A stretch of DNA of 64,000 nt from Selaginella moellendorffii (lineage: Eukaryota > Plantae > Lycopodiophyta): positions 2,014,052-2,078,051 of the forward strand of contig NW_003314273.1 of assembly GCF_000143415.4 (NCBI RefSeq). Direction: 5' to 3'. Below are positions 3,375 through 46,309 of this stretch, piece after piece. Position 1 is the first letter of the stretch, and each line of letters starts with the position of its first letter. Under the pieces are notes generated by a model that did no database searches, had not been told where the DNA came from, and saw only the letters and a program-made list of their open reading frames with translations. The position numbers and the translations under genes are program-made.

Positions 3375-3547
3375 GGAATGGGAGGCATGCTTTCCGGGAC
3401 AGTCGATCGATTCGAAAGAGTAACTCGATTCTTCTTTTATGCTTTGGCTCGATCGTCGCGTCCGATCCAACTTTTTATTTCCAGGTCTTCGAGACAAAAT
3501 CTGGCCGCAACGTCGTTGCTTCTTCTCGGTAAAGTGCCTGTAGATAG
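3375..3547 (-). repeat. Diverged repeat, inverted copy of 15123-15386
   Basis: The reverse complement shares blocks such as TTGCGGCCAGATTTTGT, CGAAGACCTGG and GAATCGATCGACTGTCCCGGAAAGCATGCCTC with 15123-15386. Both ORF translations contain YSFESIDCPGKHAS. Confidence 0.85.
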
Positions 3548-4983
3548 ACAATCCAAAGGCTCTTTAACATGGGCTAGATCAAACAATGCGTTGGACACCG
3601 CATCCCAGAAACTCCAGCATGACGCAGAATCCGAGAAAAGGCAACAGTCTCATTGTCCCCCTTCATGTAATGATAGCAATTGTTGTGATTTCTCATTCCA
3701 CTGGTGATCCTGAGAGCCATCTCGATCTTCTCAGCAAACAATCACGGTGCGAACAACTCTTGATGGCCGCCATCGACAAACTAAAGATGACGAGGTGACT
3801 GAGAGGCTTTGTGACAAAGAGAAATAGCGATGCATTTCATACTTACTTCCCCTGATGCCTCGATAGTTTTAACTGCGTATAATACGACAGATAAAACTTA
3901 GTTTCCAGGTATAACATTCGTAGCATTCTTACCTTCAAATGTGCGAGAACCTAAAACTCCACAATGGAAATTATTTGCCCAACCTATACATAAAATGGCA
4001 TCACTTTTTGGCCTAATCTTACCGTTTATTTTCACTGGATATGACCCAAGGATCAGATTTATGCTCTCCTACGCATGAGCAGTCATAGCTGTCTATACGA
4101 GAGGTCTTGCAGTTGTTGAATGCTGTGGAACCGGGGCTGTCACGGTGATGTCCCAGACCTGGAGTTTCCATCCTCATAGACACGGGCATTTTCGTGGACA
4201 TCTCTAGAGTTGAGCTAGCCCCGATTGGAGGAGCTAGCATGGAGGACTTACAGAGGAGGGAACTTATGGATGTTGTGGTGGTGGGGGGCCGCTGCGATCA
4301 TCCTTTTCATTTGTCATCGATGCACTGATGAGTGTATCTATTTCCTGAGCATGCAGAAATAGCAATACCTACATGTGTGAATAGAAGAGGAGGAAATGCT
4401 GGATCTTCCAAAAGCATTAGATTCTTGCTGTGTACTGATATGAATATTGCCATGGAATATGTATTGGCATCTTGAGAACAAGTATGTGGAGACAATGTTA
4501 TAGAGTAGTGCTCTTTCTCTTTCTCTTTCTTTTTTTATCCTTCTCAGTATCTCAGAGAAGGTGATTTCACATTAGAATGTTTTTGTCCACTGGTTCCTTG
4601 AATTCACAATGCACTCCAGATCTGGACGTGGGATTTCCACCTGTAGAAGATGAAGACTATAATATTCCATGAAACACACAAAGAACAAGTGTGTGTACTA
4701 TATACACCAATGCCATATAAAGCCATTGTGTTGGGAGCAATGGCCCCATTGCGGTTTCTTTGACAGGTGGAACAGTTGAGAACGCTAAAGTTAATAGAGC
4801 TTTTTAAATTTCTCATTGTTTGACAGGCTCATTGATGAAGTGCTTCACAAGTTATTTATGGTTAAAAAAATTAAAAACAGTATAAATTAGTGGGTCCAAG
4901 TATTTAGAGCTCCCATGTGTCTAAAAATAGAAAAAAAAAATAGAAAAGGATTTAAAAATAAATAACAATCCCAAGTGCACTAA

Positions 4984-6033
4984 ATGGAAAAGAAACACTT
5001 ATATATGGTATCAAAACTGTTTCCTATTTCTTTATATCTATGTTTGTTAAATATACAATTTGTATTTGCAACACCACCAACCCCCATTCCAGATGATGAG
5101 CCTACTCTTATATATGCTAAAAATCCCTTTGCTATCAATGTAAACCCCTTCACACGCTTTTTGGGGCACATTCGAGCATATATTTTCTCAACATTTCTTG
5201 ATGGTGAAACATATCCAGCAGGATTACGAATTATAAATATTCATTTCCATAGATCAGGGTTTGATATCACGGCAAATTTATATATTTTAGAACCTGGGTT
5301 TGCTAGTCAACAAACTCTTATACCATATGTTTGCACTACAGATCCAACAATTCCATTAGGCTTTCAAGGTGATGAGGTGAGAACCCTTTATGAAAGAATT
5401 TTAACATTCATTCGAGCAAGAGCTGCATCAGATACACATGGGATATCCTTTTGTGGAGAAATCCGTGTTGTTTATTTCAATCTTATGATTGACTATGAGA
5501 TCACAGTACCACTTCCTCAACTTCCCCATGAGATGTTCATACATAGTAATTATACTAAATACTACAAATCTGAAATAGTTCCGCAGCTACAACAGGCTGC
5601 AATACTTTTGCATATAGCAGATTTGCATAAAAATTGTTGGGCATTCTCAACTATACTTATTGGTCAGAAAACTAATATAGTTGGCTCTTCTATTGAAATT
5701 GGTAATAGTTTAACTTCACCAAATAAAAAATTCAGACTAACTTTAGGGAGTGATTGCAAGCTAAATTTTTATAAAATTGGGTATAGCATCCCACTTTGGA
5801 TTAGTGAACACAAATTTAACCCCCAGCAAAGCTGTTATGCACACTTACAAGAGGATGGAAACTTTGTTATTAAGGAAGGTAATATTAAACATGATCAAAA
5901 TAATGTTTATTGGGCTAATAATAAGTATTGTACACCACAACCCTCATGTAAGATCATCACAACATTAGTTGTGAGTAATCATGGAAATATTATTATTTAT
6001 TGGAACAGTAGAATTTTATGGAAAGCCTTGTGA
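4984..6033 (+). CDS. Secreted protein: signal peptide, unknown (possibly RIP-like) domain, C-terminal bulb-type (GNA/B) lectin domain
   Basis: Uninterrupted 349-aa ORF in AT-rich DNA with a hydrophobic N-terminus. From ~5671 it follows the B-lectin pattern (GNSLTSPNKKFRLTLGSDCKLNFY..PLW..YAHLQEDGNFVI..VYWAN..LVVSNHGNIIIY..ILW). Confidence 0.8.
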   Translation: MEKKHLYMVSKLFPISLYLCLLNIQFVFATPPTPIPDDEPTLIYAKNPFAINVNPFTRFLGHIRAYIFSTFLDGETYPAGLRIINIHFHRSGFDITANLYILEPGFASQQTLIPYVCTTDPTIPLGFQGDEVRTLYERILTFIRARAASDTHGISFCGEIRVVYFNLMIDYEITVPLPQLPHEMFIHSNYTKYYKSEIVPQLQQAAILLHIADLHKNCWAFSTILIGQKTNIVGSSIEIGNSLTSPNKKFRLTLGSDCKLNFYKIGYSIPLWISEHKFNPQQSCYAHLQEDGNFVIKEGNIKHDQNNVYWANNKYCTPQPSCKIITTLVVSNHGNIIIYWNSRILWKAL

Positions 6034-6749
6034 ATTATAGATTATAAAATATATTTTGGGGCTTATTATAAAACTTATCATAAATACTATAATTAGATAA
6101 AATTTAAAATTACTCTATATCATATATAATAACATTAGCATTACATTAGAAATTTGTAGCTGTAAGTTTTGTAACTATAAATATGCATATTTACATATAT
6201 CATAATATAATATAAATATTTTAATTATAATAGTGTAGCATAAGATTTAATCCATCCATTCCTTTATATAAACAAGGGTCTTTTCAATTATTATATCTTC
6301 ATATTGAAAATTATCCCTAAAGGACAAGGGTTATGCTTTTGGTTTTTGATTTGTTTTGATCTTCTTAGCGTTTTGTTAAATTTCATTTTATTATCATTTT
6401 TGCTCTTTATATTGCATTTCCTCTTTTTGCCATATCATGCCATCAATTAAAGAGTGTATCATTGGTCCATTGTCCTTATCTGGCAGCACTATTCTTGCTA
6501 TTGTATCACATGTGGATTGAGCTTTTGGTACTGTTGGGTGTATGATGCTGCCTTAATATTTAGTATACTGTTATTTCCAACTTCTGTGAAATATGATTAC
6601 ATTGTGTGTCCTATTCTTAATATCCAATTGGAATATACAATTGTGAAGGGTAGAATGTCCAAATGGTACTGAGCACAACCGCACATAAGAGAGCTTGGCC
6701 AAAGAATGCTAGCTGATCCCTAATATCCATTAAAGGGAATGAGAACAAT

Positions 6750-6764
6750 AGAGAGGGGGAGAGG

Positions 6765-6800
<36 letters not shown>
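6750..6800. repeat. (GA)n microsatellite
   Basis: Directly visible GA run. Confidence 0.95.
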
Positions 6801-7645
6801 AAAATGACAATAAAAATCTACCATACTCTATACTATGGTGTATTATTCATAAACTGGTGCTTTGTGAAGAGTTTATACTATGAAAAAGGACACGTGGCAT
6901 TATCTTATTGGTCTTGGTAGAATATTCTACGCATAAAATTGGATATTCTCCACATGAAAACATATATTCTGCACCTGAAAAAGAATATTCCCTAGGTGAA
7001 AATGCATATTCTACACGTGAAATCAAATAAAAATCTTCAAATGCATCCATAAATAAAAAGAAACTAGATTGCTAAAACCTCTAGAATCCAAGAAATGTTG
7101 GAATTCCTACAATCATATTCTTAAGAAATTTACTCTGAATACGAAATTATATACCTTTGTGTATTGCTCTTCATTATCACTCTTAGATGTTGAAGAAGAG
7201 TCTGAATCATATGGTATAGACTGTCCACTTATACCATTTTGCTCTTCCATGAGACTAACAAAAATCTCATGCAAAAAAATGTCTTTATCTATAACAAAGA
7301 AGTTTGAAATTGACAATAGAAATTTACTCATATTTCTTAAACCTGACTATGTATGCTATATGTCAAAACTTCCTTACAAATTCTGTCATAAAAAACCATC
7401 TAACTATTTCAAATATGAATCACCTTGCTATTGGTTTGGATTTTTCAGTATCAATACCTTCACTCTAGACTCCACCACGGCACCCCACCCAGCAACAAGC
7501 AAGCCTTGCCTCAAAGATGACTTTAATCAAAGGATGAGTAGGCATGTGCTATAGGCCATACCATGGATGTGCATAATAGGCATGTATGGAAGATCAAATG
7601 TTGCCACCTGGCAAATGGAATATTGTGCAATACAAACTCTTTTTC

Positions 7646-8017
7646 ACAGAGCATCGGTTTACAAGTAACACGCCATACATACCCCTGCCATCCTATATAT
7701 ATGCCCTGGCTCTGGGCCATATGAAATGGTTGAGTGATGAAGCAAAAGCCACTCCCTGCACCAACTATACTGCTGGATGACAGAAGCTTGCTGATTCTAG
7801 AGGGTATGGTCCAAGTCCAGATGCAAAAGCCTGAGGCACAAAGTCCTTCAAAATACGCTGGGTAGGGACAGGGGAAATGGAGGACACCTAGGTCACAAAG
7901 GAACAGTTAAAGAAGCTTGAGGAGTTCATCTATTCAACTTAGAAGACTTTGTAAGGTAGGGCATATATAGGATGACAGGGGTATGTATGGCATGTTATTT
8001 GTAAACCGGTGCTCTGT
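7646..8017. mobile_element. Chromovirus (Ty3/gypsy) 3' remnant: chromodomain fragment between ~60-bp inverted repeats
   Basis: ~7840-7930 translates KSFKIRWVGTGEMEDT*VTKEQLKKLEEF (chromodomain-like). 7646-7707 is the reverse complement of 7958-8017. Confidence 0.7.
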
Positions 8018-9229
8018 AAAAAAAAGTCTGTTCAAATCTTTTTAAATTTTGGTTTTTGTCTTCCAGCGCATTGAATATCTCTAGAGAGAGCTTTACAAGA
8101 AAGTGATATGGTTTTATAAGCAATTATTTAAGTCAATGGAGGACATTGGTATTTTAGATGTTAAATATATGGCGTATACAAAGATTGAGGTGTGTATTTA
8201 CACCTTATATTGCTAAGGACCTTGCACATTAGGTTGTGACTTGGAACATCCATAAGGTTCAAGCATTTCAAAATGGTGACTATTTCAGAGCTTCTCATGT
8301 TCCTGTAATTTGTTTCAACTTATGGAGTCTGAGCTTGGGTAAGAACATAGATATATGCTCTTTGTTTCTTTAATATATTTATTATTTTCATAGCATAGTC
8401 AGAGTATTGAGCAGTAAGGGTATTGAACTCTTGTCTAGACTATTTCTATGCAGTGTTGAAGGTGCTACTTTGCCACAAATATTTAGTTCTACCTTTTTTA
8501 TGATGTTCCCTACTCTAACAATTTCCTTGTTTTGAGCAACACATAACAATAATTTGAAATCAAGCATTTCACTCTATCATACTAGGCTAAATCTGGATGA
8601 ACAATACCTTTTACACTTAGACTTGTCAATGCAATATGCACTAGTAAATATAAACCACATCCCACTTACAGATTATATTGCAACAACACTACCCATTGTG
8701 ACTCCAATCACTAAAAGAGCTCTTGGGAAGTTGCAGATAGTCTCCATCTATCTTAGTTTTAAATTCTTTAAAATTTGTTTGTTCTTTGAGGTGTATTCCA
8801 ATTTTAAGTAGTGGAATTCAAATGTTGTCACCAAATATGTAATAGTATTATTGATTCACAAACAAAAATATAACAAAGCATGACTATATTCCTAGATCAG
8901 GAGATTGGTAAGCATGAAGTACATATTTGAACAACATGTTTTGAATCATATGGCAAGTTATAAAAGGTAATAATCTTATATGAAAAACATACATGCTATA
9001 ACTTGGTATAAGAGCTAAGTGCACTTCACCACTTTGAGCATACTTGAAAAGCATAGCGTTCCATGAAACACAGTCTCAAATACGCTCTTGAATGTTGTCT
9101 ATACAAAGTACTTTGGATGAAGCTTTGATTAAGCTATTGTCCTTTTCCTTAGGGTGTGACATTTTGGCCTATACGTTGAAAGTCCTGAAGGAACACTTCT
9201 AGTTGGCATAGAAGCTCATTCACTGCCTT

Positions 9230-9800
9230 GCAGCTTTGAGCCTTCTCTTCACCAAATGGTGTATTACAGCCCGCCTCCAGGTGTTTGGCTGTGGACAGAC
9301 AAATTGGGAAGGTACACTGTGGCGCCAAGTATGGGGCTATGCCGATTGGGGAATAAACAGCATATGCCAACCACTTCACCCAGGACGTTGGTTTGTCCAT
9401 ACAAAAAGCCCATAGCAAGGCCTCAAGAGTCTGATTTTGTTCGCTCAGTTTGCCCATCACTCTGAGGGTGATACGTGCTCAAGAAGGTGAGTTTGGTCCC
9501 CAGGATGAACAGCAATGTTCAAAAGGAGCTCAAGAACTTCAAGTCCCTATAAGAGACTATCTCCCTCAGTATCCTGTGAAAGTGGGCTATCTCCACCTAG
9601 AATAGCTCGGCCACCTTTTCTGTAGATGCCTTTGATGACACCTGGCCACATCATGCCCTCCCACTGTCGGTAGCCCCACAACAAAGTCTATTGAAATGCT
9701 ATTAAATGGATGAGCAGAAGTCCCAAGGAAGCCTCTATCTCCAATTTTGTTATCTGGCATGCTGGACACTGCACTATTAATGATGCATGTCTTTTTGGAG
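9230..9800 (-). mobile_element. Degenerate Ty3/gypsy integrase fragment
   Basis: Minus-strand frames give HPFNSISIDFVVGLP, STYHPQSDGQTERT/NQTLE and WVKWLAYA, broken by frameshifts. Confidence 0.85.
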
Positions 9801-11379
9801 GCCCTTTCTAATAAAATCTGCTCTTGATCTCCACAAGCATCTGTCCTATACCAATATGGACTACGAAAATCCCTATATGGCACTCCTTGAAGATCACTTC
9901 ACACAAAGCACTATTTTTGCTTATGATTATTGGAGAGGGTTTTGATTTTGGAATAGGGTAGATTTATCAATAGCAATGACATCTGGATTGGTGTGGCTTA
10001 TTATATCCAAGAAGCAAGGTTGGGAGCTTGGAAATGGTCACAATTGGTGAGGTGTTCAAAGTAAAAACAATTTGCTATGCATTGCATGTAGCAACAATTG
10101 ATTTGCTTAATAGTAGTGTTATTCTTACTTATTACTCCAAAACAAATTTTATAATTATAAATATGTTTATAATTTATAAACACAAGATTAAACTAAATTT
10201 AGTGTTATGTGGACTCTTCTAGAAATTAGCAACTGTTTCTTGACTGCAGAACTGTAGTAGGATGCTCAAACAGGATGAAAAACAATACAGTATTCTTTTT
10301 CTATCTTTTATTCTGGGACAAGTCTTTGTGCTTTTCTATCTGATTAACAATGCCGGTGGTATTGTCCTTGAGATTGATAATCTCGTTGAATGCTTCGTGG
10401 AAACATATCAACCACTAGATGGTAGAATAAAAAAGAATATACTAAAAAGTGTTTAAAAAGTTTATAAATTACAAACATATTTAGAAAATATAAATACAAG
10501 ATTAATCTAAATGAATAACAACTATTAGATAGTAGAATATCCTAGAATATTCACTACTATCCCTATAGGTTTGCTTAAGCCAACCAAAAATAGTAATAGG
10601 GTGTTTGGATCTTTTATATATTTACTTTTAGGATCTATTAATTTTTGATACCATAGGTAGATATATAAGGGTTAGAATTGATTTATTTTTTGGATATAGC
10701 TTGGGTTTTTAAATTTTTTTTGAACACAGCCATTTATTTTTATATTCACCCCAAGATTGATGCGCAGTCTAGTCTCCTCAAAGAATTGAGTCAGTGTAAT
10801 GTTAAGCAAGTTCACTATGTTGATTATCTTGTTCTGGCCATAGTATTTTATAATGATATATCTTTTGTTATTCAGCCTTTCTACTTGGATGAAGTCTTTT
10901 ATAATATAAGGGTTTCTATTATCTATGATTATTTCTTTTTACTTCCTCATTGTTGTTTATTTCTTCAATGTTTCTTTATCTTTTTTTTTCCATTTTCATA
11001 TTCTTTCTTTCTGAAATTTTATTGCTCTCTCCTTTTTACTTTGATAATTCAAACTTTTTTTCCTTAAAGGAGAGAGGGGATGCACAGGAATCTAGCCCAA
11101 TGATGGAGTAAAGATAAACAATAATGGTATTAGAATAATGATAATTATAATAAGTTAAAACAGAACATTTGGCCTGACTGAGTAAGGTAAAAGGGATATG
11201 ATAGTAGAGTGAAGTTAAACATAGTGAAAATGAAGTATACCCAGTAAAACATAGAATTCAAAAGGTGGATGACAATTGATAACAAAACAATTTCAAAAGA
11301 GCCATCAAAAGGAGAAGCCCATGCAATGATCTCATTACCTGCTTTCATAGGGAGTGTGAGGCTCTAGTGTTTCCAAGTG

Positions 11380-11680
11380 CAAGGATTGATAGGGAGTTGG
11401 CAAGCTTTTGCCCTTATTGATTCAAAGATGTCCCATATGTTTGTCAATAGTTTATCACTCTCAAAACTCAAACTCTATAGGAAAGGTACCATTAGAGCTG
11501 GCTATTGAGATAGCTGATGGAGGAATTATGAAGTTGACCATAATCACCCAAAGTGAATTCAATATGGGAGGTTTTGTGATATATGGCCATTTCCATGTGT
11601 TGGAGATGGGGATCATTAATATCACCATTGGCATTAAGACCCTTCACCAACTTTAGGAGATCTCAATGAACTTTGTTTTG
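11380..11680 (+). mobile_element. Degenerate Ty3/gypsy aspartic protease
   Basis: ALIDSKMSHMFVNS (decayed DSG motif), then after a frameshift IEIADGG...FHVLEMGIINITIGIKTL. Confidence 0.7.
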
Positions 11681-11974
11681 CAGATCTTGTGGCAAGGGGT
11701 AAACCAATCTCCATCAATTCAGATTGCTTTGGCAGCTCAATATTCTCAATTAGTGGCAAAGGGAGTTGAGCTGGTGCTTTATCATTCATTCGTAGGAGTT
11801 TGAGAAAATCATGTAGGGAGCACATGGACCTAAGTAGATCTTGTGGTGGGGTCCTAGTTAGTTTAGTTGAGATATATGATGAGAAGAAAGTAGAGAAGAA
11901 AGTAGGGCATTAGTGGACGAATGTGACGGTGTGAGTGACAAGACCCAGAAGAAAGCATGGACATTGGAGATAGT

Positions 11975-12572
11975 TGTAAGCAACCAAAGAGAACGACTTA
12001 AAACAATCCATGGGGTTCAAATATAAAGGGAAAGGGCCTATGAATAAAAGTTTTCTAATCGATTAAGGGTCTTGAATATTTGGAGTTAAGTATCCTTGGG
12101 TTTGAATAGTATTGGGTTGGATGACCTCCTGAGAAGTTTAAATTCAAGAGCTTACATTTGGTATTAGAGAGGTCTCAGAGTCTGACTTTATTAATTGGCT
12201 TACATTTGGTATTAAAGAGGTCTCAGAGTCTGACTCTATTAGTTAGCTTAGGGGAATTATATCACATGTTGAGATTGACATCTGGTAGGTCCAATTTGCT
12301 CCTAGCTGGGCTCGACTCGAGGGGTAGGGTTCTCTCAGCTTCCGTTTATAAGGGCATAAACTTGCAGGGAAGCATGGTGAATTATAAACAACCAAAGAAA
12401 AAAACTTGACAGATGATCCATAGGGTTTAAATATAAAGGGAAAGGGCTCATGAACAAAAGCCCCCTTTTCTAATCAATTAAGGGTTTTGGGATATTTGGG
12501 GTTAAGTGTCCTTGGGTTTAAATAGTACTAGGCTGAGTGACTTCCCAGGAAGTTCAAATTCAAGAGCTTACA
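11975..12572 (+). mobile_element. Cassandra-like TRIM (non-autonomous LTR retrotransposon with 5S rRNA-derived LTRs), full length
   Basis: LTR1 11975-12156 (TGTAAG...CTTACA) and LTR2 12383-12572. Met-tRNA PBS-like TGGTATTAGAG follows LTR1. Flanks ATAGT/ATTGT match 4/5 as a TSD. Each LTR holds a 5S A-box/IE/C-box-like segment (12084-12137, 12501-12553). Confidence 0.85.
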
Positions 12573-12709
12573 ATTGTCACAAAGAGCAAAGATTGGGTAA
12601 GAACAAGGCAATATTAAAAGCATTAAAAGATATTGAAAATGCAAACCTCTAGGGAAACATCTAAGTGTTATCCAAAGGTATTACAAAGATTGATAAGAGT
12701 CCAATGATA

Positions 12710-13500
12710 AGTTAGGTGTCAAACACCATATCAGTCTGAAAGTTGGTATAGCACCTATTGCTAAAGCATTTGTCAGACTCAATCAAGAGGAGAGGCTAGT
12801 GGTGGACAAAATGGTGAATTGTGTGTTGACTATTGCCTCCTCAACAAGTCCACAATCAAGAACTTCTTTCCAATTCTGAACATGGAAGACCTCTTCAAGG
12901 AGCTGGGTTAGGTGTGTTTCTTCACCAAACTAGATTTGAGATTTGACTATTACCAAATATTGGTGGCTGACGAGGATTGCTTCAAGACAGCTTTCTAGAT
13001 AGATGTTACAGATGCCTTGGATGCAAGGGTAGGAGCTATCTTGAAACAAGGGGAGAAACTCATAGCCTTCAAGAGTAGCAAACTTAGTGACATAGAGGCT
13101 TGCCAGCTGGTTTATGAGCAAGAGATGATGGCCATAATGCATACCATTAGGAAGTGGCAGCATTATTTGGTCCCAGCTCATTTCATGCTATGAGTGGACC
13201 ACTTTAGCATAAAGTTTTTACTTGAGCAACAGAATTTGAGCAAGAAACAAAGGTAGTGGATTGAACAATTACAAAAATTGGATTTCATAATCAAGTATAA
13301 ACTTGGGAAATTCAACACTCTCTCTCAAAAGTTTGAGAAACCAGCAAAATCATACCTCAGGGCCTTGTCAGCTCATCAGCAAAACTATGTACAGCAGATC
13401 ACAGAGGGGCATAATCAGGACCCAGTACTGTCACCAATACTAGATCACTTCCAGCCTTCATATTCTGATTTCAGCTTCAAAGATGGGCAAGGGATACCCT
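12710..13500 (+). mobile_element. Degenerate Ty3/gypsy reverse transcriptase (N-terminal part) and RNase H
   Basis: VDYCLLNKSTIKNFFPI..FFTKLDLRFDYYQI..DCFKTAF, an internal deletion, then TDALDARVGAILKQ..YEQEMMAIMHTIRKWQHYL..DFIIKYKLGK, with stops. Confidence 0.9.
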
Positions 13501-14954
13501 TTGTCACCTGCTGGGAAGCCAAGAAGATATACTACCTCATGAGGACTTTATGGATCCGAGATGTAGGGGCCACACTTATCCAACGTGCAGTGGACGTTGA
13601 CAGAAACTAGAGACCTAGGAATCTCCCACAAGATAAGATACCCAACTGGAAGTCATGGCATGGAGCTGCACTATCCTTTATCTTCGGTTCCTACGCTTGT
13701 AGATAGTGTCATTGAGGACTCCAAAGAACTGGATTGACAATACAGGACAGGATGGTGGCACAGCATCATTGGATGGACAATCAGCTTTGGACATGAGATC
13801 AACCACTTGCTTGACAAGGAAAACAGATTGTGTGGATCAGAACCAAGTAGCCATGATTAGGTACCATATGTACACAGAGGAGATCAACCTAAACAAGATA
13901 CATAGTGACAATTTATAATAGGCTCTCAAATTGGAATAAACAAATATTTTATAAACAAGACATGAATATAAAGCATTTCAAAAATAGTCATCAGGCTAAA
14001 ACTTTATAAGTCATCAGATTAACAAAATTCAAAAGCTAGATCACTTAATAGGGTCAAGGGATGGTCCAAAAAGTTTGGAGGAAACATATTGTACCTAATG
14101 AAGGATTAGAAAGATTATAATATCTAAGTATGAAAATAATGAATATTTTATTAATGGTGGAAAGTGCTATATTAAACTTGTGAAAATGTGTTCACAGAAG
14201 AAAACAATTTTTGCAAAGAGTTGTATATAAACACTACAGTGCAGTGCTAACTAATAATTGACATAAGAAACAACTACTATATTTTAAAAAAGACCTAGAC
14301 AAATGGGATGATGCCACTGCACAAAGAGCCACCAACTTTACATCCAACCAAAGTCCAATGCACCGAAGGGACAGAAATAGTGACACCAACACTGCCTGAT
14401 ATACCAAGATCTGCTCTCCCCCCACATCAACTGGAACACCCACTGCTAGCCACCCCTGAATATGCAGTGCTGTTCCCTGAGACCCTCCAGGAAATAACAC
14501 CGAGACAATGAAGCAGGGACAAGTGACACCAATGGAGGAGCTGTGGAGCCATGGGAGAAAATCAACACATGAACACTAATCCACCTTACATTTTTGCTCC
14601 CGAGGAATTAAAATCATGATCACTCGATGCAAAGAACACAACTTTAAACAACATATAAATAGATACAGTTTAAAGCTACGGTTAGAGTTTACCTGAATCC
14701 ATCAGTTGGATGTAACCAGTATATGAATGAATGAATGAATTTTGTCTCGTGCTCCAATGGTACCAATTGGAGAACGGCATGGGAGTGTTGTTCAGTCATA
14801 CCTTTAAGGCAGATGTGACAAACTCAACAAGATTGCCTAAGATTGTAGATCCGTCTCTTTTCAGATTCAGCATCCCCGGAGGACAGTCTAACAAACAGAC
14901 TTGTTTCAGGTCAAGGGCCTGTTTTTCTTGCTACTTCGTTAAAACATTTAGCAA

Positions 14955-15023
14955 CTTGTAGAGCCGATCCCGGGTTCGAACCCAAGAGGGACTCCTTTTA
15001 ATTTCCTGGGGCACGGCGAACAC
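14955..15023 (+). repeat. tRNA-like/SINE-like repeat with a Pol III B-box, deleted copy of 30403-30515
   Basis: 30 bp identical to 30403-30432 (CTTGTAGAGCCGATCCCGGGTTCGAACCCA) plus downstream shared blocks. Confidence 0.7.
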
Positions 15024-15122
15024 GTGACTCTTGCGTGCTCAACGTGGATTTTGCGTCAAGCTGATCTTCACGCGTTATATGGTTTAGATTTATTTTTGGC
15101 TAGCGATTTTGACTAAAAGAGG

Positions 15123-15386
15123 CTATCTACAAGCAAAGTGGTAGACGATACACGTACTCTACTTTACCATGAAGTAAATGAGGAGGAACACGAGAAGAAA
15201 CGAGGCAACGATCGTGAACATGTTGCGGCCAGATTTTGTTTCGAAGACCTGGGACCAAAAGGTGGGATCGCAAAGTCAGTAGCAGTCGATCGAGCCAAAG
15301 AGAAGAACAAAAATCGAGTTCGCTTAGCTTACTCTTTTGAATCGATCGACTGTCCCGGAAAGCATGCCTCGCGCAGTATCCATTCC
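15123..15386 (+). repeat. Diverged repeat, inverted partner of 3375-3547
   Basis: See 3375-3547. This copy is longer; the left copy has multiple small deletions. Confidence 0.85.
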
Positions 15387-33900: not shown

Positions 33901-34103
33901 TTATGTTTACTTTAGCCTTAGACTCTTCACTCATTAAGTAGGTATAACTTTCTTTTACTATTAAAATCCTCCCTTTACTATCTCACAAAAACTTACAAAA
34001 CCTTTTAAAGTCTGAGAGATGATCACTTTAGGCTTTCATCCCACCCTTTAGACATATTTAGGTGATATTTCATAATGAAGTGAGATAGTTTTAATATCAT
34101 TCT

Positions 34104-34257
34104 TGTAAACAACCAAAGAGAATAACTCAAGAGAGGATCTATAATAGTTCAAATATTAAAAAAAAGGCCTATAAATAAGAGTATATCCTCTATTTCAATT
34201 AATTAAAAAACTTTTAGGATACTGTTCTTGGGTTTTAGTAGTATTAGATTGGGTGAT
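34104..34257 (+). mobile_element. Truncated solo LTR of the Cassandra-like family
   Basis: TGTAAACAACCAAAGAGAA start and the 5S-like TTCTTGGGTTTTAGTAGTATTAGATTGGGTGA segment match 11975-12156. Confidence 0.7.
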
Positions 34258-36578
34258 TAGAAAATTCATAATATTTTCATTAATCAAGAATAAAAATTAG
34301 GGGCATAAAGATGATCAAATACCATTTTAGTCTCAATTATAAATGCATTTTGAGCTTAGTGTCATAGTAGTAAATATAGTTTTGCTAACTAATCTTTACT
34401 AAAGTTGGATATTTTTTAGTTGCTTTTGTATTACGTATTGGTCATTCTTTTGTCCCTTTTTGATATTTGTTTATCAATCATTTCATTCTCATTCTTCGGG
34501 TGTTTTCTTAAGAGTTTTATTCTCATTCTTAAATTGTCCAAATCAAACTTGAGTTTTTCTTTAGAAGTTTTATTTCCACATTTCAATTTTCCAAATTAGA
34601 GCTTTTGGTCCAAACATGTTATATTTATTGGACTTCTACCTTAGTTATTCCCATATGGCAGACATTTAATTCTACTTTGGGATTTCGGGATTTATATTTC
34701 ATATTAATATTTGGTTTCAAAAATGAATTACTTTATACATTAAAAGGTTATTAAAATTAAAGGAGATAGTTATAACTAAAGAATAGTAAGTGGATTTGAA
34801 TAGTTTCTTATAATTATTATTATTTAATTAAAATGATAATTTAGTAAAAGTTTGAACCTTGAAAAACTTTAAAGATTATAAGTAGCTTTAGAAATTGAAA
34901 AATATTCACTCAGCTCTATTGTTAAGTTTAATAGTCATGGTAGGTTTAATCTTAAAGGGATAGTGTATATTTATTCAATACATTAATATAATTATTGAAA
35001 GAATTAACAATTTATATTTTTCAAGATAGAAACATATTAATTTATATTTTTTATTTATTTTTATTAATTAGACCAAACACTTCACACAAAAATATATATT
35101 ATAAAATATTTTTTATTCTTTTTATAATATTATTTTAATAAAGAAATGGGATGATTGACGATATGAAGCAGCATAACTCAAATTAATTATTTCCTAACAA
35201 AATAAACAAAAAAACTTTTTTAGAAAAATAAATTCTTACAAATTCCTACTTTTCAAGTTCAATTTAATCCTTTATTCAATGTTATGAGAAAAATGGGGTA
35301 AAAACTTATTTAAGCATTTTTACTAATTAAAATATTAAATTATTGATTAATTAAATTTATATTTTTAAATTTATTTTTAGTCTATGGTTTTATTTTTTTC
35401 CTAATATTTAAATTATATATATAAAACTTAACATTTTTTAATATACAAGTCATAATATAAAATTTGTTACTACCATTATTATTTGCTAGAGGATATGTTG
35501 GTCAAAAAAATTAAATTAAATAAGTTAAAAATAATTGTTATCATTGAAAAAGTGTTCAAAACTGTGTGTAAAATACATAAAAAAGGTGTGATACATAAAA
35601 TATTAAACCAAAAAACATCTTTTTAGGGTTTAAAAAGAGTTGTTTTATACTAGTTTGATAAAAAAAATCATTTAATCGAAATAATTTGAAAAAGAGATTT
35701 AAATTTTTATATTTTGGCAACGTAATAAACTTAAATTTTATATTTAAGAAACTCATTCCACAACTTTTTTTTTAGTTTATTTTCTTTTTATAATTATATT
35801 TGATAATTTTTTAAGGTCTTCTATAGCTTATAAAAGCTAATATTTTTTTAAGTTGATTTAAAAAATATAGTTTAATAATCTCATTGTTAAATAAAACATA
35901 AATAACTTTTATTACTTATAGAAATTTTCTTAAAATTATATTTCTATATAACTCAATTTATGCTATAATAATGATAAAATAAATATTTGTGTATTTATTA
36001 TGATGAAGTTTTTTTGGGCCTTAAGTATATAATCTTTCTTTTTGCTAAATTTTATTTTAAATTCCAAATTGTAACACATTAGAAATTATTGAATGTATAC
36101 ACAAATGAGCAAACACATTTGTGTGTTTTTGAAAGATAGTAATATTTCACAATCATGTGTTTTAATTTGTATATAATATTTATTTAAATGATTATTTAGA
36201 AATATAACATGAGAAAGTGAATTATTTAATTTTTTAAATAGTAAAAAATGAGATGGCACTATTAATAACAAGTTACAATTCAACTTTGAATTTTAATAAT
36301 TGCATTATGGCACGAAGTGATAAAACTATTACTCCATAATAATAAATAACTAAATTATTATTGATTGTTAAATGAAAATATACTAAGGATTATACTAATG
36401 TTTCTAACAGTTTAGAATTGTTATTATTTATAATCAAATTTTAGTTAGTTAGAGTTCCATGGGTGTTTAACAAGTTTTGAACTAAATAAGTGAACTAATT
36501 TAATGGGCTGTGAAGTCGGTGAGTGGAGCGCCTTCCGTAACTGGAGGTAAGCGACACTCAATGCCACAAGGCAAGGCG

Positions 36579-43711: not shown

Positions 43712-44316
43712 TTCCTCTTCTCGAGCTTCTGCTTTTTCTTCTTCCGCTCAATCTGCTCAATGGGAACTCAAAACATGCTCCCACTCAGCCTGACTCAGAA
43801 ACACAGTGCCCTTTTCAGAGCCTCTGTGTTCGTTCATCAAATGTTTGAGTTAAATTTGCATTATGAAACATAAACCCTGAATTCATTTCTAATGGAGTTA
43901 TCTCCAGTGCTTAGCTGAATGCGAAGCCAAACTTACTTCCTTTAAGGTACGCGTGTCATCGTCAGTTATAACTTTAAGGGTACAACGTTTGCCCACTAAA
44001 TATGTTGAAGCTATAACCTCATATATGTATTATGTACCATACTACAAATTCATTGGGACATCTGTCTTCTTATAACATAAGGGTTTGAATCTCAAAAACT
44101 AAGGTGGCAAGAAAATTCAGTGAAATCAAATTTTCATTGAAAATTCACTGAAAATTCGGAAAATGATTAAATAAATTTCTTTTGTAATGTAGCTTGTAAG
44201 AGTTGGAGCACTGAAAACCTTCTATTAATAATGGCTAAAATTAATAACACAATTAGAGTGTAAGGAGAATTATAGCCAAAATTGAGCACATTGTGCACTA
44301 ATTTTGTAATTAACCT

Positions 44317-46309
44317 TGGAAAAAGGGCAGTTGCTCAATGAGAGAGCCCTTAGTGGCTATTCCCTCAAGGTTTCAAGGATCCACGGTGACAGTATATCCA
44401 AATCTCATCCCATGATCATATCCCCCGTTCAAAGATGTCAATGTTCTTATTGACTATTGATTAACAACCCCTACTGAGCCAAAGGGAACCAGCACCTCCA
44501 TTTTCGCACTCAATCTACCAATCCTTCTATTGTGTAGACTAGTTATTCCAAGGACATTGACTATTGACTAACAACCCCTACTGAACCAAAGGGAACCAAC
44601 ACCTCCATTTTCGCACTCAATAGTAGGGGCCAAAGGGAACCAGCACTTCCATTTCCGCACTCAATCTACTAATCCTTCCATTGTCACTCAATCTACCATT
44701 GTGTAGACTAGCTATTCCAAGGACATTAACAATCTCATCCCATGATCACATGCGCTACACTCACCCCCCCTTCAGAGATGTCAATGTCCTCATTGACTAT
44801 TGACTAACAACCCCTACTGAGCCAAAGGGAACCAGCACTTCCATTTCCGCACTCAATCTACCAATCCTTCGATTGTGTAGACCAGCTATTCCAAGGACAT
44901 TGACTATTGACTAACAACCCTTACTGAGCCAAAGGGAACCAACACCTCCGGGAACCAACACTTCCATTTCTGCACTCAATAGTAGGGGCCAAAGGGAACT
45001 AACACTTCCATTTCCACACTTAATCTACTAATCCTTCCATTGTCACTCAATCTATCAATCCTTCCATTGTGTAGACCAGCTATTCCAAGGACATTGACTA
45101 TTGACTAACAACCCCTACTGAGCCAAAGGGAACCAACACCTCCGGGAACCAACACTTCCATTTCTGCACTCAATCTACTAATCCTTCCATTGTCACTCAA
45201 TTTACCAATCCTTCTATTGTGTAGATCAGCTATTCCAAGGACATTGACTATTGACTAACAACCCCTACTGAGCTAAAGGGAACCAGCACCTCCATTTCCG
45301 CACTCAATCTACCAATCCTTCTATTGTGTAGATTAGCTATTCCATGTGAGGCAAAAATCCACCCCAATCCTTCCATTGTGTAGACTAACTATTCCAAGGC
45401 CATTGCAACCCCTACTGAGCCAAAGGGAACCAACATCTTCATTTCTGCACTTAATCTACCAATCCTTCCATTGTGTAGACTAGCTATTCCATGTGAGGTG
45501 AGCCAAAGGGAACCAGCACCTCCGGAACCAACACTTCCATTTCCGCACTCAATCTACTAATCCTTCCATTGTCACTCAATTTACCAATTTTTCCATTGTG
45601 TAGACCAGCTATTCCAAGGACATTGACTATTGACTAACAACCCCTACTGAGCCAAAAGGGAACCAACACTTCCATTTTCGCACTCAATCTACCAATCCTT
45701 CCATTATGTAGACCAGCTATTCCATGTGAGGCAAAAATCCACCCCAATCCTTCCATTGGTGTTCCATTTCCGCACTCAATCTACCAATCCTTCCATTATG
45801 TAGACCAGTTATTCCATGTGAGGCAAAAATCCACCCCAATCCTTCCATTGTGTAGACCAGTTATTCCAAGGACATTGCAACCCCTACTAAGCCAACCCCT
45901 ACTAAGCCAAAGGGAATCAGCATCTCCATTTCCGCACTCAATCTACCAATCCTTCTATTTCCGCACTCAATCTACCAATCTTTCCATTGTGTAGACTAGT
46001 TATTCCATGTGAGACAACTAGTTATCCACCCGTACCGCAGTCCCACGGTGGATACCTTCGTACGATTTTCAAATTTAGGGGTAGGAATATACCTTGCTCA
46101 AGGGTAATCAATGAGAATCGAATCCGTGTTATTTGCTTCGATACCAACTATAACACACTTTATCTCTCTCCCCTTAAGCCAACTGGAAAAGGGGCAATTT
46201 CTTGATAAGAGAACCCTTAGTGGCTATTTTATCCCCATTTATCCCCCAAGGTTCCAAGCTCTATGGTGACAGTATATCCAAATCTCATCCCATGATCACA
46301 TGCGCTACA
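44317..46309 (-). mobile_element. TRIM-like non-autonomous LTR element with an expanded internal tandem array
   Basis: 5' LTR 46309-46149 begins TGTAGCGC. PBS TGGTATCGAAGC at 46146-46135. PPT GAAGGGGGGGTGAG at 44773-44760 precedes an LTR start. Truncated 3' LTR at ~44420-44317. Confidence 0.8.
44440..46012. repeat. Complex tandem repeat array with ~100-130 bp modular units
   Basis: Repeated GACATTGACTATTGACTAACAACCCCTACTGAGCCAAAGGGAACC..CACTCAATCTACCAATCCTTCCATTGTGTAGAC, more than 10 variant copies. Confidence 0.95.

What the first reader, a model, noticed from the sequence alone, without database searches (positions are those of the whole stretch)
4984..6033. Intact secreted chimera: RIP-like domain fused to a bulb-type (GNA) lectin, inside a TE graveyard
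Seen: an unbroken, intronless 349-aa ORF, far more AT-rich than the resident genes, while every neighbouring TE ORF is riddled with stops. It has a signal peptide and a C-terminal B-lectin whose only near-canonical QxDxNxV site is QEDGNFV. Inference: the ~200-aa middle region shows four motifs in the order found in ribosome-inactivating A chains: FTRFLGHIR (cf. YxxFIxxLR), DITANLYI (cf. DVTNLYV, adenine-stacking Tyr), TIPLG (cf. NIPLG) and LHKNCWAFST (cf. LENSWGRLST). The catalytic ExxR is not recognisable. Established: type-2 RIPs use a ricin-B lectin, so a GNA-lectin partner would be an unusual AB-type defence architecture, possibly non-catalytic and possibly mobilised or horizontally acquired.
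Basis: partly seen in the sequence, partly recalled or inferred. Interest (0 to 1): 0.8.

Follow-up and report, generated by a model that had tools for sequence, protein, structure and literature searches.

The report
Secreted lectin with orphan N-domain
This is a real, intact plant gene for a secreted protein with a snowdrop-type sugar-binding domain behind a ~190-residue domain of unknown fold; its only relatives are five unstudied genes of the spikemoss Selaginella, and nothing tested supports the idea that the unknown domain is a ribosome-inactivating toxin.

Summary
The 349-aa ORF at 4984..6033 (+) is real. It is open at P ~5e-12 for local composition. GC falls 41/36/23% over codon positions 1-3, and GC3 is 23% against 46-69% in the neighbouring plant genes. 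The N-terminus looks like a signal peptide. Residues ~229-349 are a GNA/bulb-type beta-prism II lectin: 245 lectin hits in an exhaustive search, AF2 pLDDT 73-92, and Foldseek TM 0.75-0.82 to garlic, snowdrop and Gastrodia lectins. One near-canonical sugar site (QEDGNFVIK) is present.

The RIP reading of residues 30-216 found no support. No RIP family or RIP structure was hit at E<=10 with the protein, its relatives or three profiles. The proposed key Tyr and Arg are not conserved in the closest relative. The fold could not be predicted (pLDDT <50).

The gene belongs to a small unnamed family. One full-length relative exists among 1.84 billion representatives, a Selaginella moellendorffii hypothetical protein (30% identity, E 4e-47). 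Four more Selaginella loci share the architecture. All are intronless and mostly AT-rich. All carry a Cys-Trp linker and a YCxP(Q/S)PxC loop in the lectin.

Best reading: a secreted chimerolectin, probably for defence or recognition, whose effector domain is an orphan. Horizontal transfer or mobilisation is neither shown nor excluded.

The parts
4881..4887 (+). TATA-like heptamer about 100 nt upstream of the ATG (possible core promoter; weak evidence)
   Evidence: Pattern match only; no transcript data.
4984..6033 (+). Complete intronless coding sequence, 349 codons plus stop
   Evidence: unbroken ORF, P(open) ~5e-12, codon-position GC 0.41/0.36/0.23. Full-length relative in Selaginella at E 4e-47.
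4984..5070 (+). Predicted signal peptide (aa 1-29; cleavage inferred after V-F-A)
   Evidence: Single N-terminal hydrophobic segment. All full-length family members start with a comparable hydrophobic leader. Inference; no signal-peptide predictor available.
5071..5631 (+). Orphan N-domain (aa 30-216), fold unknown; conserved Cys117
   Evidence: No Pfam, NCBIfam or PDB match. Only significant relative is Selaginella SELMODRAFT_428061/406093. AF2 pLDDT <50.
5632..5667 (+). Linker with Cys218-Trp219 (N-C-W-A-F-S-T-I-L-I-G-Q), a family hallmark
   Evidence: The Cys is present in all six family members; five have it at the same aligned position and the second L002 copy has it offset by a few residues. 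Trp follows in four. A disulfide to Cys117 is inferred, not shown.
5668..6030 (+). GNA/bulb-type (B-lectin, beta-prism II) domain, aa 229-349
   Evidence: 245 of 246 exhaustive-search hits lie here, best E 4.5e-27. PDB sequence hits to pyocin L1 and garlic/snowdrop lectins. AF2 pLDDT 73-92. Foldseek probability 1.00, target TM 0.75-0.82.
5848..5874 (+). The one near-canonical sugar-binding motif, Q289-E-D-G-N-F-V-I-K297
   Evidence: Q289, D291, N293 and V295 are invariant in all six family members and in the single-domain lectins aligned. The Tyr position is Lys here.
5926..5949 (+). Family-specific Cys loop Y-C-T-P-Q-P-S-C (aa 315-322) inside the lectin domain
   Evidence: Y315, C316, P318, P320 and C322 are invariant in the family. 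Among the 154 proteins retrieved, the pattern occurs only in Selaginella entries.

Best explanation
The ORF is a functional plant nuclear gene for a secreted two-domain chimerolectin. It belongs to a small, so far unnamed family known otherwise only from the lycophyte Selaginella moellendorffii. A signal peptide takes the protein into the secretory pathway (inferred). The C-terminal beta-prism II domain supplies glycan recognition through one retained mannose-type site (fold shown by prediction; binding inferred). The ~190-residue N-domain is an orphan alpha/beta module. It is probably tied to the lectin through a conserved Cys117-Cys218 pair and supplies the second, still unknown activity: an effector, inhibitor or oligomerisation function (inferred). 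Several traits fit a defence or recognition role at the cell surface or in the vacuole: multiple copies including a tandem pair, fast divergence of the N-domain, and purifying selection on both halves in a Selaginella tandem pair. It is not a demonstrable ribosome-inactivating protein.
For: Real gene: intact ORF at P ~5e-12 with codon periodicity. Plant genes lie on both sides in the same window. Family: one full-length hit among 1.84 billion representatives, P0001 = S. moellendorffii EFJ09349, 30% identity over aa 19-349, E 4e-47. Reading Selaginella loci gave two tandem intact ORFs (L002:3425-4348 and 6960-7931), a 5'-truncated one (L003:27-647) and P0117 (L005:10001-11002). These share the leader, an N-domain of similar size, the Cys(-Trp) linker and the YCxP(Q/S)PxC loop. 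Lectin. The sugar-site residues Q, D, N and V are invariant across the family. Constraint: dN/dS is 0.20 between the L002 tandem copies (N-domain 0.26, lectin 0.12). The window ORF pairs with L001 more closely than L001 does with its own paralogues, so the subfamily appears older than the split of the two species.
Against: No transcript or protein evidence for the window gene. Its exact product is absent from the protein and contig collections. No close paralogue or orthologue exists, so no direct dN/dS; against L001, synonymous sites are saturated. The dS of the L002 pair is near saturation (1.1-2.0), so that ratio is rough. Homology of the N-domain to those of L002, L003 and L005 is not statistically supported (hhalign E 0.13-0.48). 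It rests on shared architecture and a few anchors. Pfam scores the lectin below its own threshold. The Tyr of the sugar-binding pattern is Lys, so binding may be weak or altered. The two Selaginella haplotype copies differ by 3 nonsynonymous and 0 synonymous changes, which is too few to interpret. The defence role is inference only.
Confidence: 0.72

Rival explanations
1. One reading: residues ~30-228 are a diverged, perhaps non-catalytic, ribosome-inactivating (rRNA N-glycosylase) domain fused to a GNA lectin, an AB-type toxin with an unusual B part.
For: Domain order (leader, ~200-aa module, lectin) resembles type-2 RIP precursors. Low-confidence AF2 secondary structure (short strand, helix, beta-hairpin, later helix or strands) is not incompatible with an alpha+beta fold. 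The fold is undetermined, so it is not excluded.
Against: No PF00161 match at E<=10 for six family members or for the isolated N-domain. No RIP among PDB hits at E<=10 in five searches, three of them with profiles. The putative stacking Tyr100 is His and Arg64 is Val in the closest relative, and there is no ExxR in either protein. The 'fourth motif' is the family's Cys-Trp interdomain linker. The mature N-domain (~187 aa) is shorter than typical RIP A chains of roughly 250 aa (my own knowledge).
Confidence: 0.05
2. The gene is a recent foreign acquisition or a passenger of a mobile element. Its AT-richness reflects a donor genome, and the inverted repeats at 3382-~3560 and ~15130-15370 are the ends of a ~12-kb element that carried it in.
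For: GC3 is 0.23 against 0.46-0.69 in resident genes. The whole block ~4500-15000 is AT-rich. Inverted repeats of 76-98% identity bracket this block. The gene is intronless. The lectin domain scores better against a bacterial lectin-like bacteriocin model than against Pfam's B_lectin.
Against: The only relatives of the N-domain are in another plant. None turned up in viral, metagenome or prokaryote contig scans. Four of five Selaginella paralogues are equally AT-rich (GC3 0.20-0.40) in a different genome, so low GC is an old family or regional trait rather than a mark of recent arrival. The inverted repeats have no target-site duplication and no sharp outer edge. No transposase was found in the block.
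Confidence: 0.1
3. The ORF is an unexpressed relic that happens still to be open: a young pseudogene in decaying, repeat-rich DNA.
For: It sits in AT-rich, gene-poor DNA with a retrotransposon remnant nearby. There is no expression evidence, and its product is absent from the collections.
Against: 349 open codons at 7% stop frequency per codon (P ~5e-12). The codon-position GC gradient is preserved. All structurally important residues of the lectin and all family-invariant Cys are kept.
Confidence: 0.08

Closest known systems
Selaginella moellendorffii hypothetical proteins SELMODRAFT_428061 / 406093 (EFJ09349, EFJ35006; UniRef 'Bulb-type lectin domain-containing protein')
   Same: Full-length collinear similarity (30% identity, E 4e-47). 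Both have a leader, an N-domain with shared blocks (C-x-x-D-P-x-I-P; A-A-S-D...F-C-G-x-I-R...I-D-Y), a Cys-Trp linker, and a lectin with the Q-x-D-G-N-x-V-I-K site and the Y-C-x-P-Q-P-x-C loop. Both are intronless when the in-frame 36-nt 'intron' of the public model is read through.
   Different: 70% of residues differ. The window protein has a longer leader and small indels in the N-domain. Its GC3 is 0.23 against 0.40. Its genomic neighbours differ, so no synteny is seen.
Other S. moellendorffii loci of the same architecture (L002 tandem pair incl. SELMODRAFT_6930/18084, L003 SELMODRAFT_139027, L005 = P0117)
   Same: Leader, N-domain of ~150-190 aa, Cys-containing linker, B-lectin with the same Cys loop. 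All intronless; most AT-rich.
   Different: Their N-domains are not significantly alignable to the window's. Their lectin domains are no closer to the window's than generic B-lectins by score. Different subdomain sugar sites are canonical.
GNA-related (monocot mannose-binding / bulb-type) lectins and GNA chimerolectins of plants
   Same: Beta-prism II fold, the conserved disulfide pair (C258/C284 here), the QxDxNxVxY-type site, and secretory synthesis (family properties from established knowledge and PMC6362431).
   Different: Classical members are single or tandem lectin domains with three (or fewer) active sites. Known plant fusions in the PMC6362431 survey are with kinase/S-locus/PAN, glycosyl hydrolase, EGF or peptidase M11 domains. 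A fusion behind this orphan N-domain is not described there. Only one site is retained, with Lys for Tyr, and there is an extra Cys loop.
Type-2 ribosome-inactivating proteins (A chain + ricin-B lectin)
   Same: Overall logic of a secretory precursor with an N-terminal ~200-aa module and a C-terminal lectin, possibly linked by a disulfide.
   Different: No detectable RIP domain, no ricin-B domain, and no conserved catalytic residues. The resemblance is architectural only.
Lectin-like bacteriocins (putidacin L1 / pyocin L1, tandem MMBL domains)
   Same: The lectin domain matches the NCBIfam LLB model (E 5.7e-6; all six family members hit) and the pyocin L1/L2 chains in the PDB.
   Different: Score 25.9 bits against a cutoff of 275. 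There is one lectin domain, not two, and the N-domain shows no lectin similarity. The protein is eukaryotic and carries a signal peptide.

Membership tests
Ribosome-inactivating proteins (Pfam PF00161, rRNA N-glycosylase) | Significant match to the family profile | tested here: not met
   No PF00161 hit at E<=10 for the whole protein, aa 30-228 alone, P0001, P0151, or the six aligned family members. HMMER filters may hide hits above E~0.1.
Ribosome-inactivating proteins (Pfam PF00161, rRNA N-glycosylase) | Sequence similarity to solved RIP A chains | tested here: not met
   No RIP chain among PDB hits at E<=10 by phmmer or with profiles A2, A6 and A8.
Ribosome-inactivating proteins (Pfam PF00161, rRNA N-glycosylase) | Conserved active-site residues (two Tyr, Glu-x-x-Arg, Trp) | tested here: not met
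   No ExxR in the window protein or in L001. The candidate Tyr100 is His and Arg64 is Val in L001. The Trp lies in the interdomain Cys-Trp linker.
Ribosome-inactivating proteins (Pfam PF00161, rRNA N-glycosylase) | RIP fold | tested here: inconclusive
   AF2 gave pLDDT <50 for aa 1-229, both alone and with an 8-sequence alignment. No fold comparison is meaningful for that part.
Ribosome-inactivating proteins (Pfam PF00161, rRNA N-glycosylase) | Enzymatic activity on rRNA | not testable with these tools
   Not addressed.
GNA-type / bulb-type lectin domain (Pfam PF01453, beta-prism II) | Match to family profiles and members | tested here: met
   Pfam gives 20-24 bits, below its 32.4 threshold. 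However, there are 245 B-lectin proteins at E<=1e-3, best 4.5e-27, NCBIfam LLB at 5.7e-6, and PDB lectins at 2e-4 to 3e-3.
GNA-type / bulb-type lectin domain (Pfam PF01453, beta-prism II) | Beta-prism II fold | tested here: met
   AF2 pLDDT 73-92 over aa 230-349. Foldseek probability 1.00, target TM 0.75-0.82, rmsd 2.2-2.6 A to Gastrodia, garlic, neoculin and snowdrop lectins.
GNA-type / bulb-type lectin domain (Pfam PF01453, beta-prism II) | QxDxNxVxY sugar-binding pattern in the subdomains | tested here: inconclusive
   One of three subdomains keeps Q, D, N and V, with Lys at the Tyr position (aa 289-297). The other two are degenerate. Binding was not measured.
GNA-type / bulb-type lectin domain (Pfam PF01453, beta-prism II) | Conserved intradomain Cys pair | tested here: met
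   C258 and C284 are invariant in the family alignment and present in most of the aligned single-domain lectins. The disulfide itself is inferred.
Unnamed lycophyte family (SELMODRAFT_428061-like secreted N-domain + B-lectin proteins) | Collinear full-length similarity including the N-domain | tested here: met
   E 2.3e-36 (library-wide) and 4e-47 (pairwise), aa 19-349 against 2-323 of P0001.
Unnamed lycophyte family (SELMODRAFT_428061-like secreted N-domain + B-lectin proteins) | Hydrophobic leader, Cys(-Trp) linker, YCxP(Q/S)PxC loop, no intron | tested here: met
Lectin-like bacteriocins (NCBIfam NF033557) | Score above the curated cutoff; tandem MMBL domains | tested here: not met
   25.9 bits against a cutoff of 275; a single lectin domain; the N-domain is unrelated to the lectin domain.

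The most novel reading that the evidence does not exclude
The N-domain is a previously undescribed effector fold, and the family is a lycophyte-specific class of AB-like secreted defence proteins: an orphan 'A' module tethered by a disulfide to a single-site GNA lectin 'B' module. It would have arisen independently of the RIP/ricin-B and aerolysin/lectin fusions and been kept as multi-copy, fast-evolving, AT-rich intronless genes.
Probability: 0.2. Interest if true: 0.6.

Novelty: new variant of a known kind. Interest (0 to 1): 0.35.

Why it matters
GNA-type lectins are among the best-studied plant defence proteins, and their fusions show how plants combine glycan targeting with effector modules. 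Here the partner is a ~190-residue domain with no relative in 1.84 billion representative proteins outside one lycophyte. It has no Pfam family and no predictable fold. Naming this family would add a lineage-restricted architecture to the plant lectin catalogue. It would also correct several public Selaginella gene models. Finally, it gives a compact target for structure determination of an orphan domain.

Tried and rejected
1. Word-index protein searches with the whole ORF and with aa 30-228 found nothing. With the two-sequence N-domain profile they found only P0001.
2. AF2 on the single sequence failed (pLDDT 32). AF2 with 8 sequences folded only the lectin.
3. hhalign of the window/L001 N-domain profile against the L002 pair and against L005 gave E 0.48 and 0.13, not significant. 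The L005 alignment does follow the anchors seen by eye.
4. The N-domain is not a degenerate lectin repeat: BLASTP of the N half against the C half gave E 12.
5. A direct profile-profile comparison with RIP sequences was left out. No RIP came back as a hit, and no comparator was available by reference. The only RIP-fold proteins reachable by accession in the held collections are bacterial toxins of listed germs, which I did not fetch.
6. Species identification failed. Exact look-ups of the PPO, PPR and GDSL products and of the ORF itself found nothing.
7. Scans of metagenome, viral and prokaryote contigs for the N-domain found nothing.
8. Rfam found nothing in the window.
9. Literature searches found no description of this family or of the Selaginella accessions.
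10. The reading of 3382-15370 as a TIR transposon was rejected for lack of a target-site duplication, a sharp end or a transposase.

Full report
**1. Observation**

The ORF at 4984..6033 (+) is present as described: ATG start, 349 codons, one terminal stop.
- With the local composition (stop probability 0.072 per codon), 349 open codons have a chance of about 5e-12.
- GC falls from 0.41 to 0.36 to 0.23 over codon positions 1-3, as expected for coding sequence in an AT-biased gene.
- The window is plant nuclear DNA. ORFs elsewhere encode a polyphenol oxidase with the chloroplastic PPO C-terminal domains, a PPR protein, a GDSL lipase, a PB1 protein and a RING protein.
- Their GC3 is 0.46-0.69, so the compositional contrast is real.
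- The ORF lies in an AT-rich block of about 10 kb.
- The 'graveyard' claim was only thinly confirmed. Of 65 stop-free stretches of at least 55 aa between 3400 and 15400, one (12999-13190 +) matches the RT-associated RNase H of LTR retrotransposons (E 2e-12). None of the others matches anything. A few dispersed repeats are present.

**2. The C-terminal half is a GNA-type lectin**

- Pfam alone is below threshold (20-24 bits against 32.4).
- An exhaustive phmmer scan of 1.84 billion representatives gave 246 hits at E<=1e-3. Of these, 245 align only to residues ~209-349, with best E 4.5e-27.
- PDB sequence hits are pyocin L1/L2 and the garlic, snowdrop, neoculin and Gastrodia lectins.
- With an 8-sequence alignment, AF2 modelled residues 230-349 at pLDDT 73-92.
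- Foldseek matched that part to GNA-family structures with probability 1.00, target TM 0.75-0.82 and rmsd 2.2-2.6 A.
- Of the three subdomain sites, only Q289-E-D-G-N-F-V-I-K297 is near the QxDxNxVxY pattern, with Lys at the Tyr position. Q, D, N and V are invariant in all relatives.

**3. The N-terminal half is not recognisably a RIP**

- PF00161 does not appear at E<=10 for the protein, for residues 30-228 alone, or for any of five relatives.
- No RIP chain appears among PDB hits at E<=10 by phmmer or with three family profiles.
  - the Arg that ends FTRFLGHIR is Val;
  - the Tyr of DITANLYI is His;
  - neither protein has an ExxR;
  - NCWAFS is the conserved Cys-Trp linker in front of the lectin domain in the family.
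- The fold could not be predicted (pLDDT <50 in both AF2 runs). A RIP fold is therefore not formally excluded, but nothing supports it.
- A direct profile comparison with RIP sequences was left out, because no comparator was available by reference.

**4. What it is: one member of a small family**

- The single full-length hit in the exhaustive search is P0001 (E 2.3e-36; pairwise 30% identity over aa 19-349, E 4e-47).
- P0001 is Selaginella moellendorffii EFJ09349 (SELMODRAFT_428061). A haplotype copy is EFJ35006. Both are annotated only as hypothetical or 'Bulb-type lectin domain-containing' proteins.
- Its public model removes a 36-nt in-frame 'intron'. Read through, the ORF (335 aa) aligns to the window protein without that gap. 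Both genes therefore appear intronless.
- Following other Selaginella hits to their contigs showed that short public models are parts of longer ORFs of the same build:
  - two tandem ORFs of 307 and 323 aa (L002:3425-4348 and 6960-7931);
  - a 5'-truncated ORF at a contig end (L003:27-647);
  - P0117 (333 aa, L005:10001-11002).
- Shared features are a hydrophobic leader, an N-domain of 150-190 aa with one conserved Cys, a linker with Cys (usually Cys-Trp), and a B-lectin with an extra Y-C-x-P-(Q/S)-P-x-C loop. Among all 154 retrieved proteins this loop occurs only in Selaginella entries.
- The N-domains of these further members are not significantly alignable to the window's (hhalign E 0.13-0.48). 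Family-wide homology of the N-domain is therefore inferred from architecture and a few anchors, not shown.

**5. Constraint and composition**

- The tandem pair in L002 gives dN/dS 0.20 (N-domain 0.26, lectin 0.12), with dS near saturation. Both halves appear to be under purifying selection there.
- The window gene has no close relative, so no such estimate is possible. Its intact frame and kept invariant residues are the evidence for constraint.
- Four of the five Selaginella loci are also AT-rich (GC3 0.20-0.40, below their surroundings). One is GC-rich, with GC3 0.74.
- Low GC is thus an old trait of most of the family in two genomes. This weakens the inference of recent horizontal arrival.
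- The N-domain has no relative in viral, metagenomic or prokaryotic contigs.
- By single-domain score the window's lectin is closest to L001's (40% identity, 96 bits). All other lectins, family or not, lie near 60 bits.
- The window/L001 pair is closer than L001 is to its own paralogues, so this subfamily predates the split of the two species.
- The source species could not be identified.

**6. Most likely mechanism**

- Shown: an intact coding sequence, a lectin fold (by prediction), one conserved sugar-site motif, and family membership.
- Inferred:
  - secretion through the leader;
  - glycan binding by the single site;
  - a Cys117-Cys218 bridge between the domains;
  - an effector, inhibitor or oligomerisation role for the orphan N-domain;
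  - a defence or recognition function, suggested by the multiple copies (including a tandem pair) and the fast divergence.
- The mature protein has seven Cys, so Cys157 may be free or may form an intermolecular bond.

**7. Rivals**

I rate the rival readings as follows:
- RIP-lectin toxin: 0.05.
- Foreign or mobilised gene: 0.10. Inverted repeats at 3382-~3560 and ~15130-15370 bracket the AT-rich block, but they lack a target-site duplication, sharp ends or a transposase.
- Unexpressed relic: 0.08.

**8. Novelty**

A survey of plant lectin architectures lists GNA fusions with kinase/S-locus/PAN, glycosyl hydrolase, EGF and peptidase M11 domains. It does not list this one (PMC6362431). No paper in the library cites the Selaginella accessions. 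I file the gene as a new variant of a known kind: a GNA chimerolectin with an undescribed partner domain, in a family that exists in databases only as partly mis-modelled hypothetical proteins.

**Limits**

- There is no expression data.
- The N-domain fold is undetermined.

Noticed in passing
window 3382-~3560 and ~15130-15370: Inverted repeat (arms ~150-240 nt with indels, 76-98% identity) bracketing the whole AT-rich block that holds the ORF. No target-site duplication, no sharp outer edge, and no transposase in between. It could be an old inverted duplication or the decayed ends of a large element.
   Followed up: partly
L001:10001-11008 and L006:3001-4008 (S. moellendorffii GL377663.1, GL377569.1): The public gene models SELMODRAFT_428061/406093 splice out a 36-nt in-frame stretch. 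The unspliced ORF (335 aa) aligns without a gap to the window protein, so the 'intron' is probably an annotation artefact. The two haplotype copies differ by 3 nonsynonymous and 0 synonymous changes.
   Followed up: partly
L002:3425-4348 and L002:6960-7931; L003:27-647: The public 'partial' 97-aa and 112-aa Selaginella lectin models (SELMODRAFT_6930/18084, 139027) are the C-terminal parts of longer intact ORFs with a leader and an N-domain. The L002 pair is a tandem duplication at 57% identity.
   Followed up: yes
window 12999-13190 (+): Stop-free fragment matching the RT-associated RNase H domain of LTR retrotransposons (E 2e-12). It is the only Pfam-detectable transposon remnant found between 3400 and 15400.
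   Followed up: partly
window 11974-12576; also 62469-62976 and 34103-34182: A ~190-nt unit repeated about 410 nt apart (80% identity), with weaker copies near 62.5 kb and 34.1 kb, plus a 48-nt tandem duplication at 12150-12245. This is a dispersed repeat family of unknown type.
   Followed up: no
window 7632-7700 and 7963-8031: Inverted repeat with 69-nt arms, 90% complementary, 262 nt apart. It is MITE-like or a hairpin-forming element about 1.6 kb downstream of the ORF.
   Followed up: no
window 34001-36000 and 44001-46000: An extremely AT-rich stretch (GC 0.21) at 34-36 kb, and a stretch with strong negative GC skew (-0.33) at 44-46 kb. Neither was examined.
   Followed up: no
L004:1093-1758 (Logan SRR32678474): P0071, a 221-aa protein with hydrophobic N-terminal segments and a B-lectin domain 41-46% identical to the window's lectin domain, lies next to a BSP-family (PF04450) gene. 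It lacks the family's Cys loop and N-domain, and its source organism is unknown.
   Followed up: no
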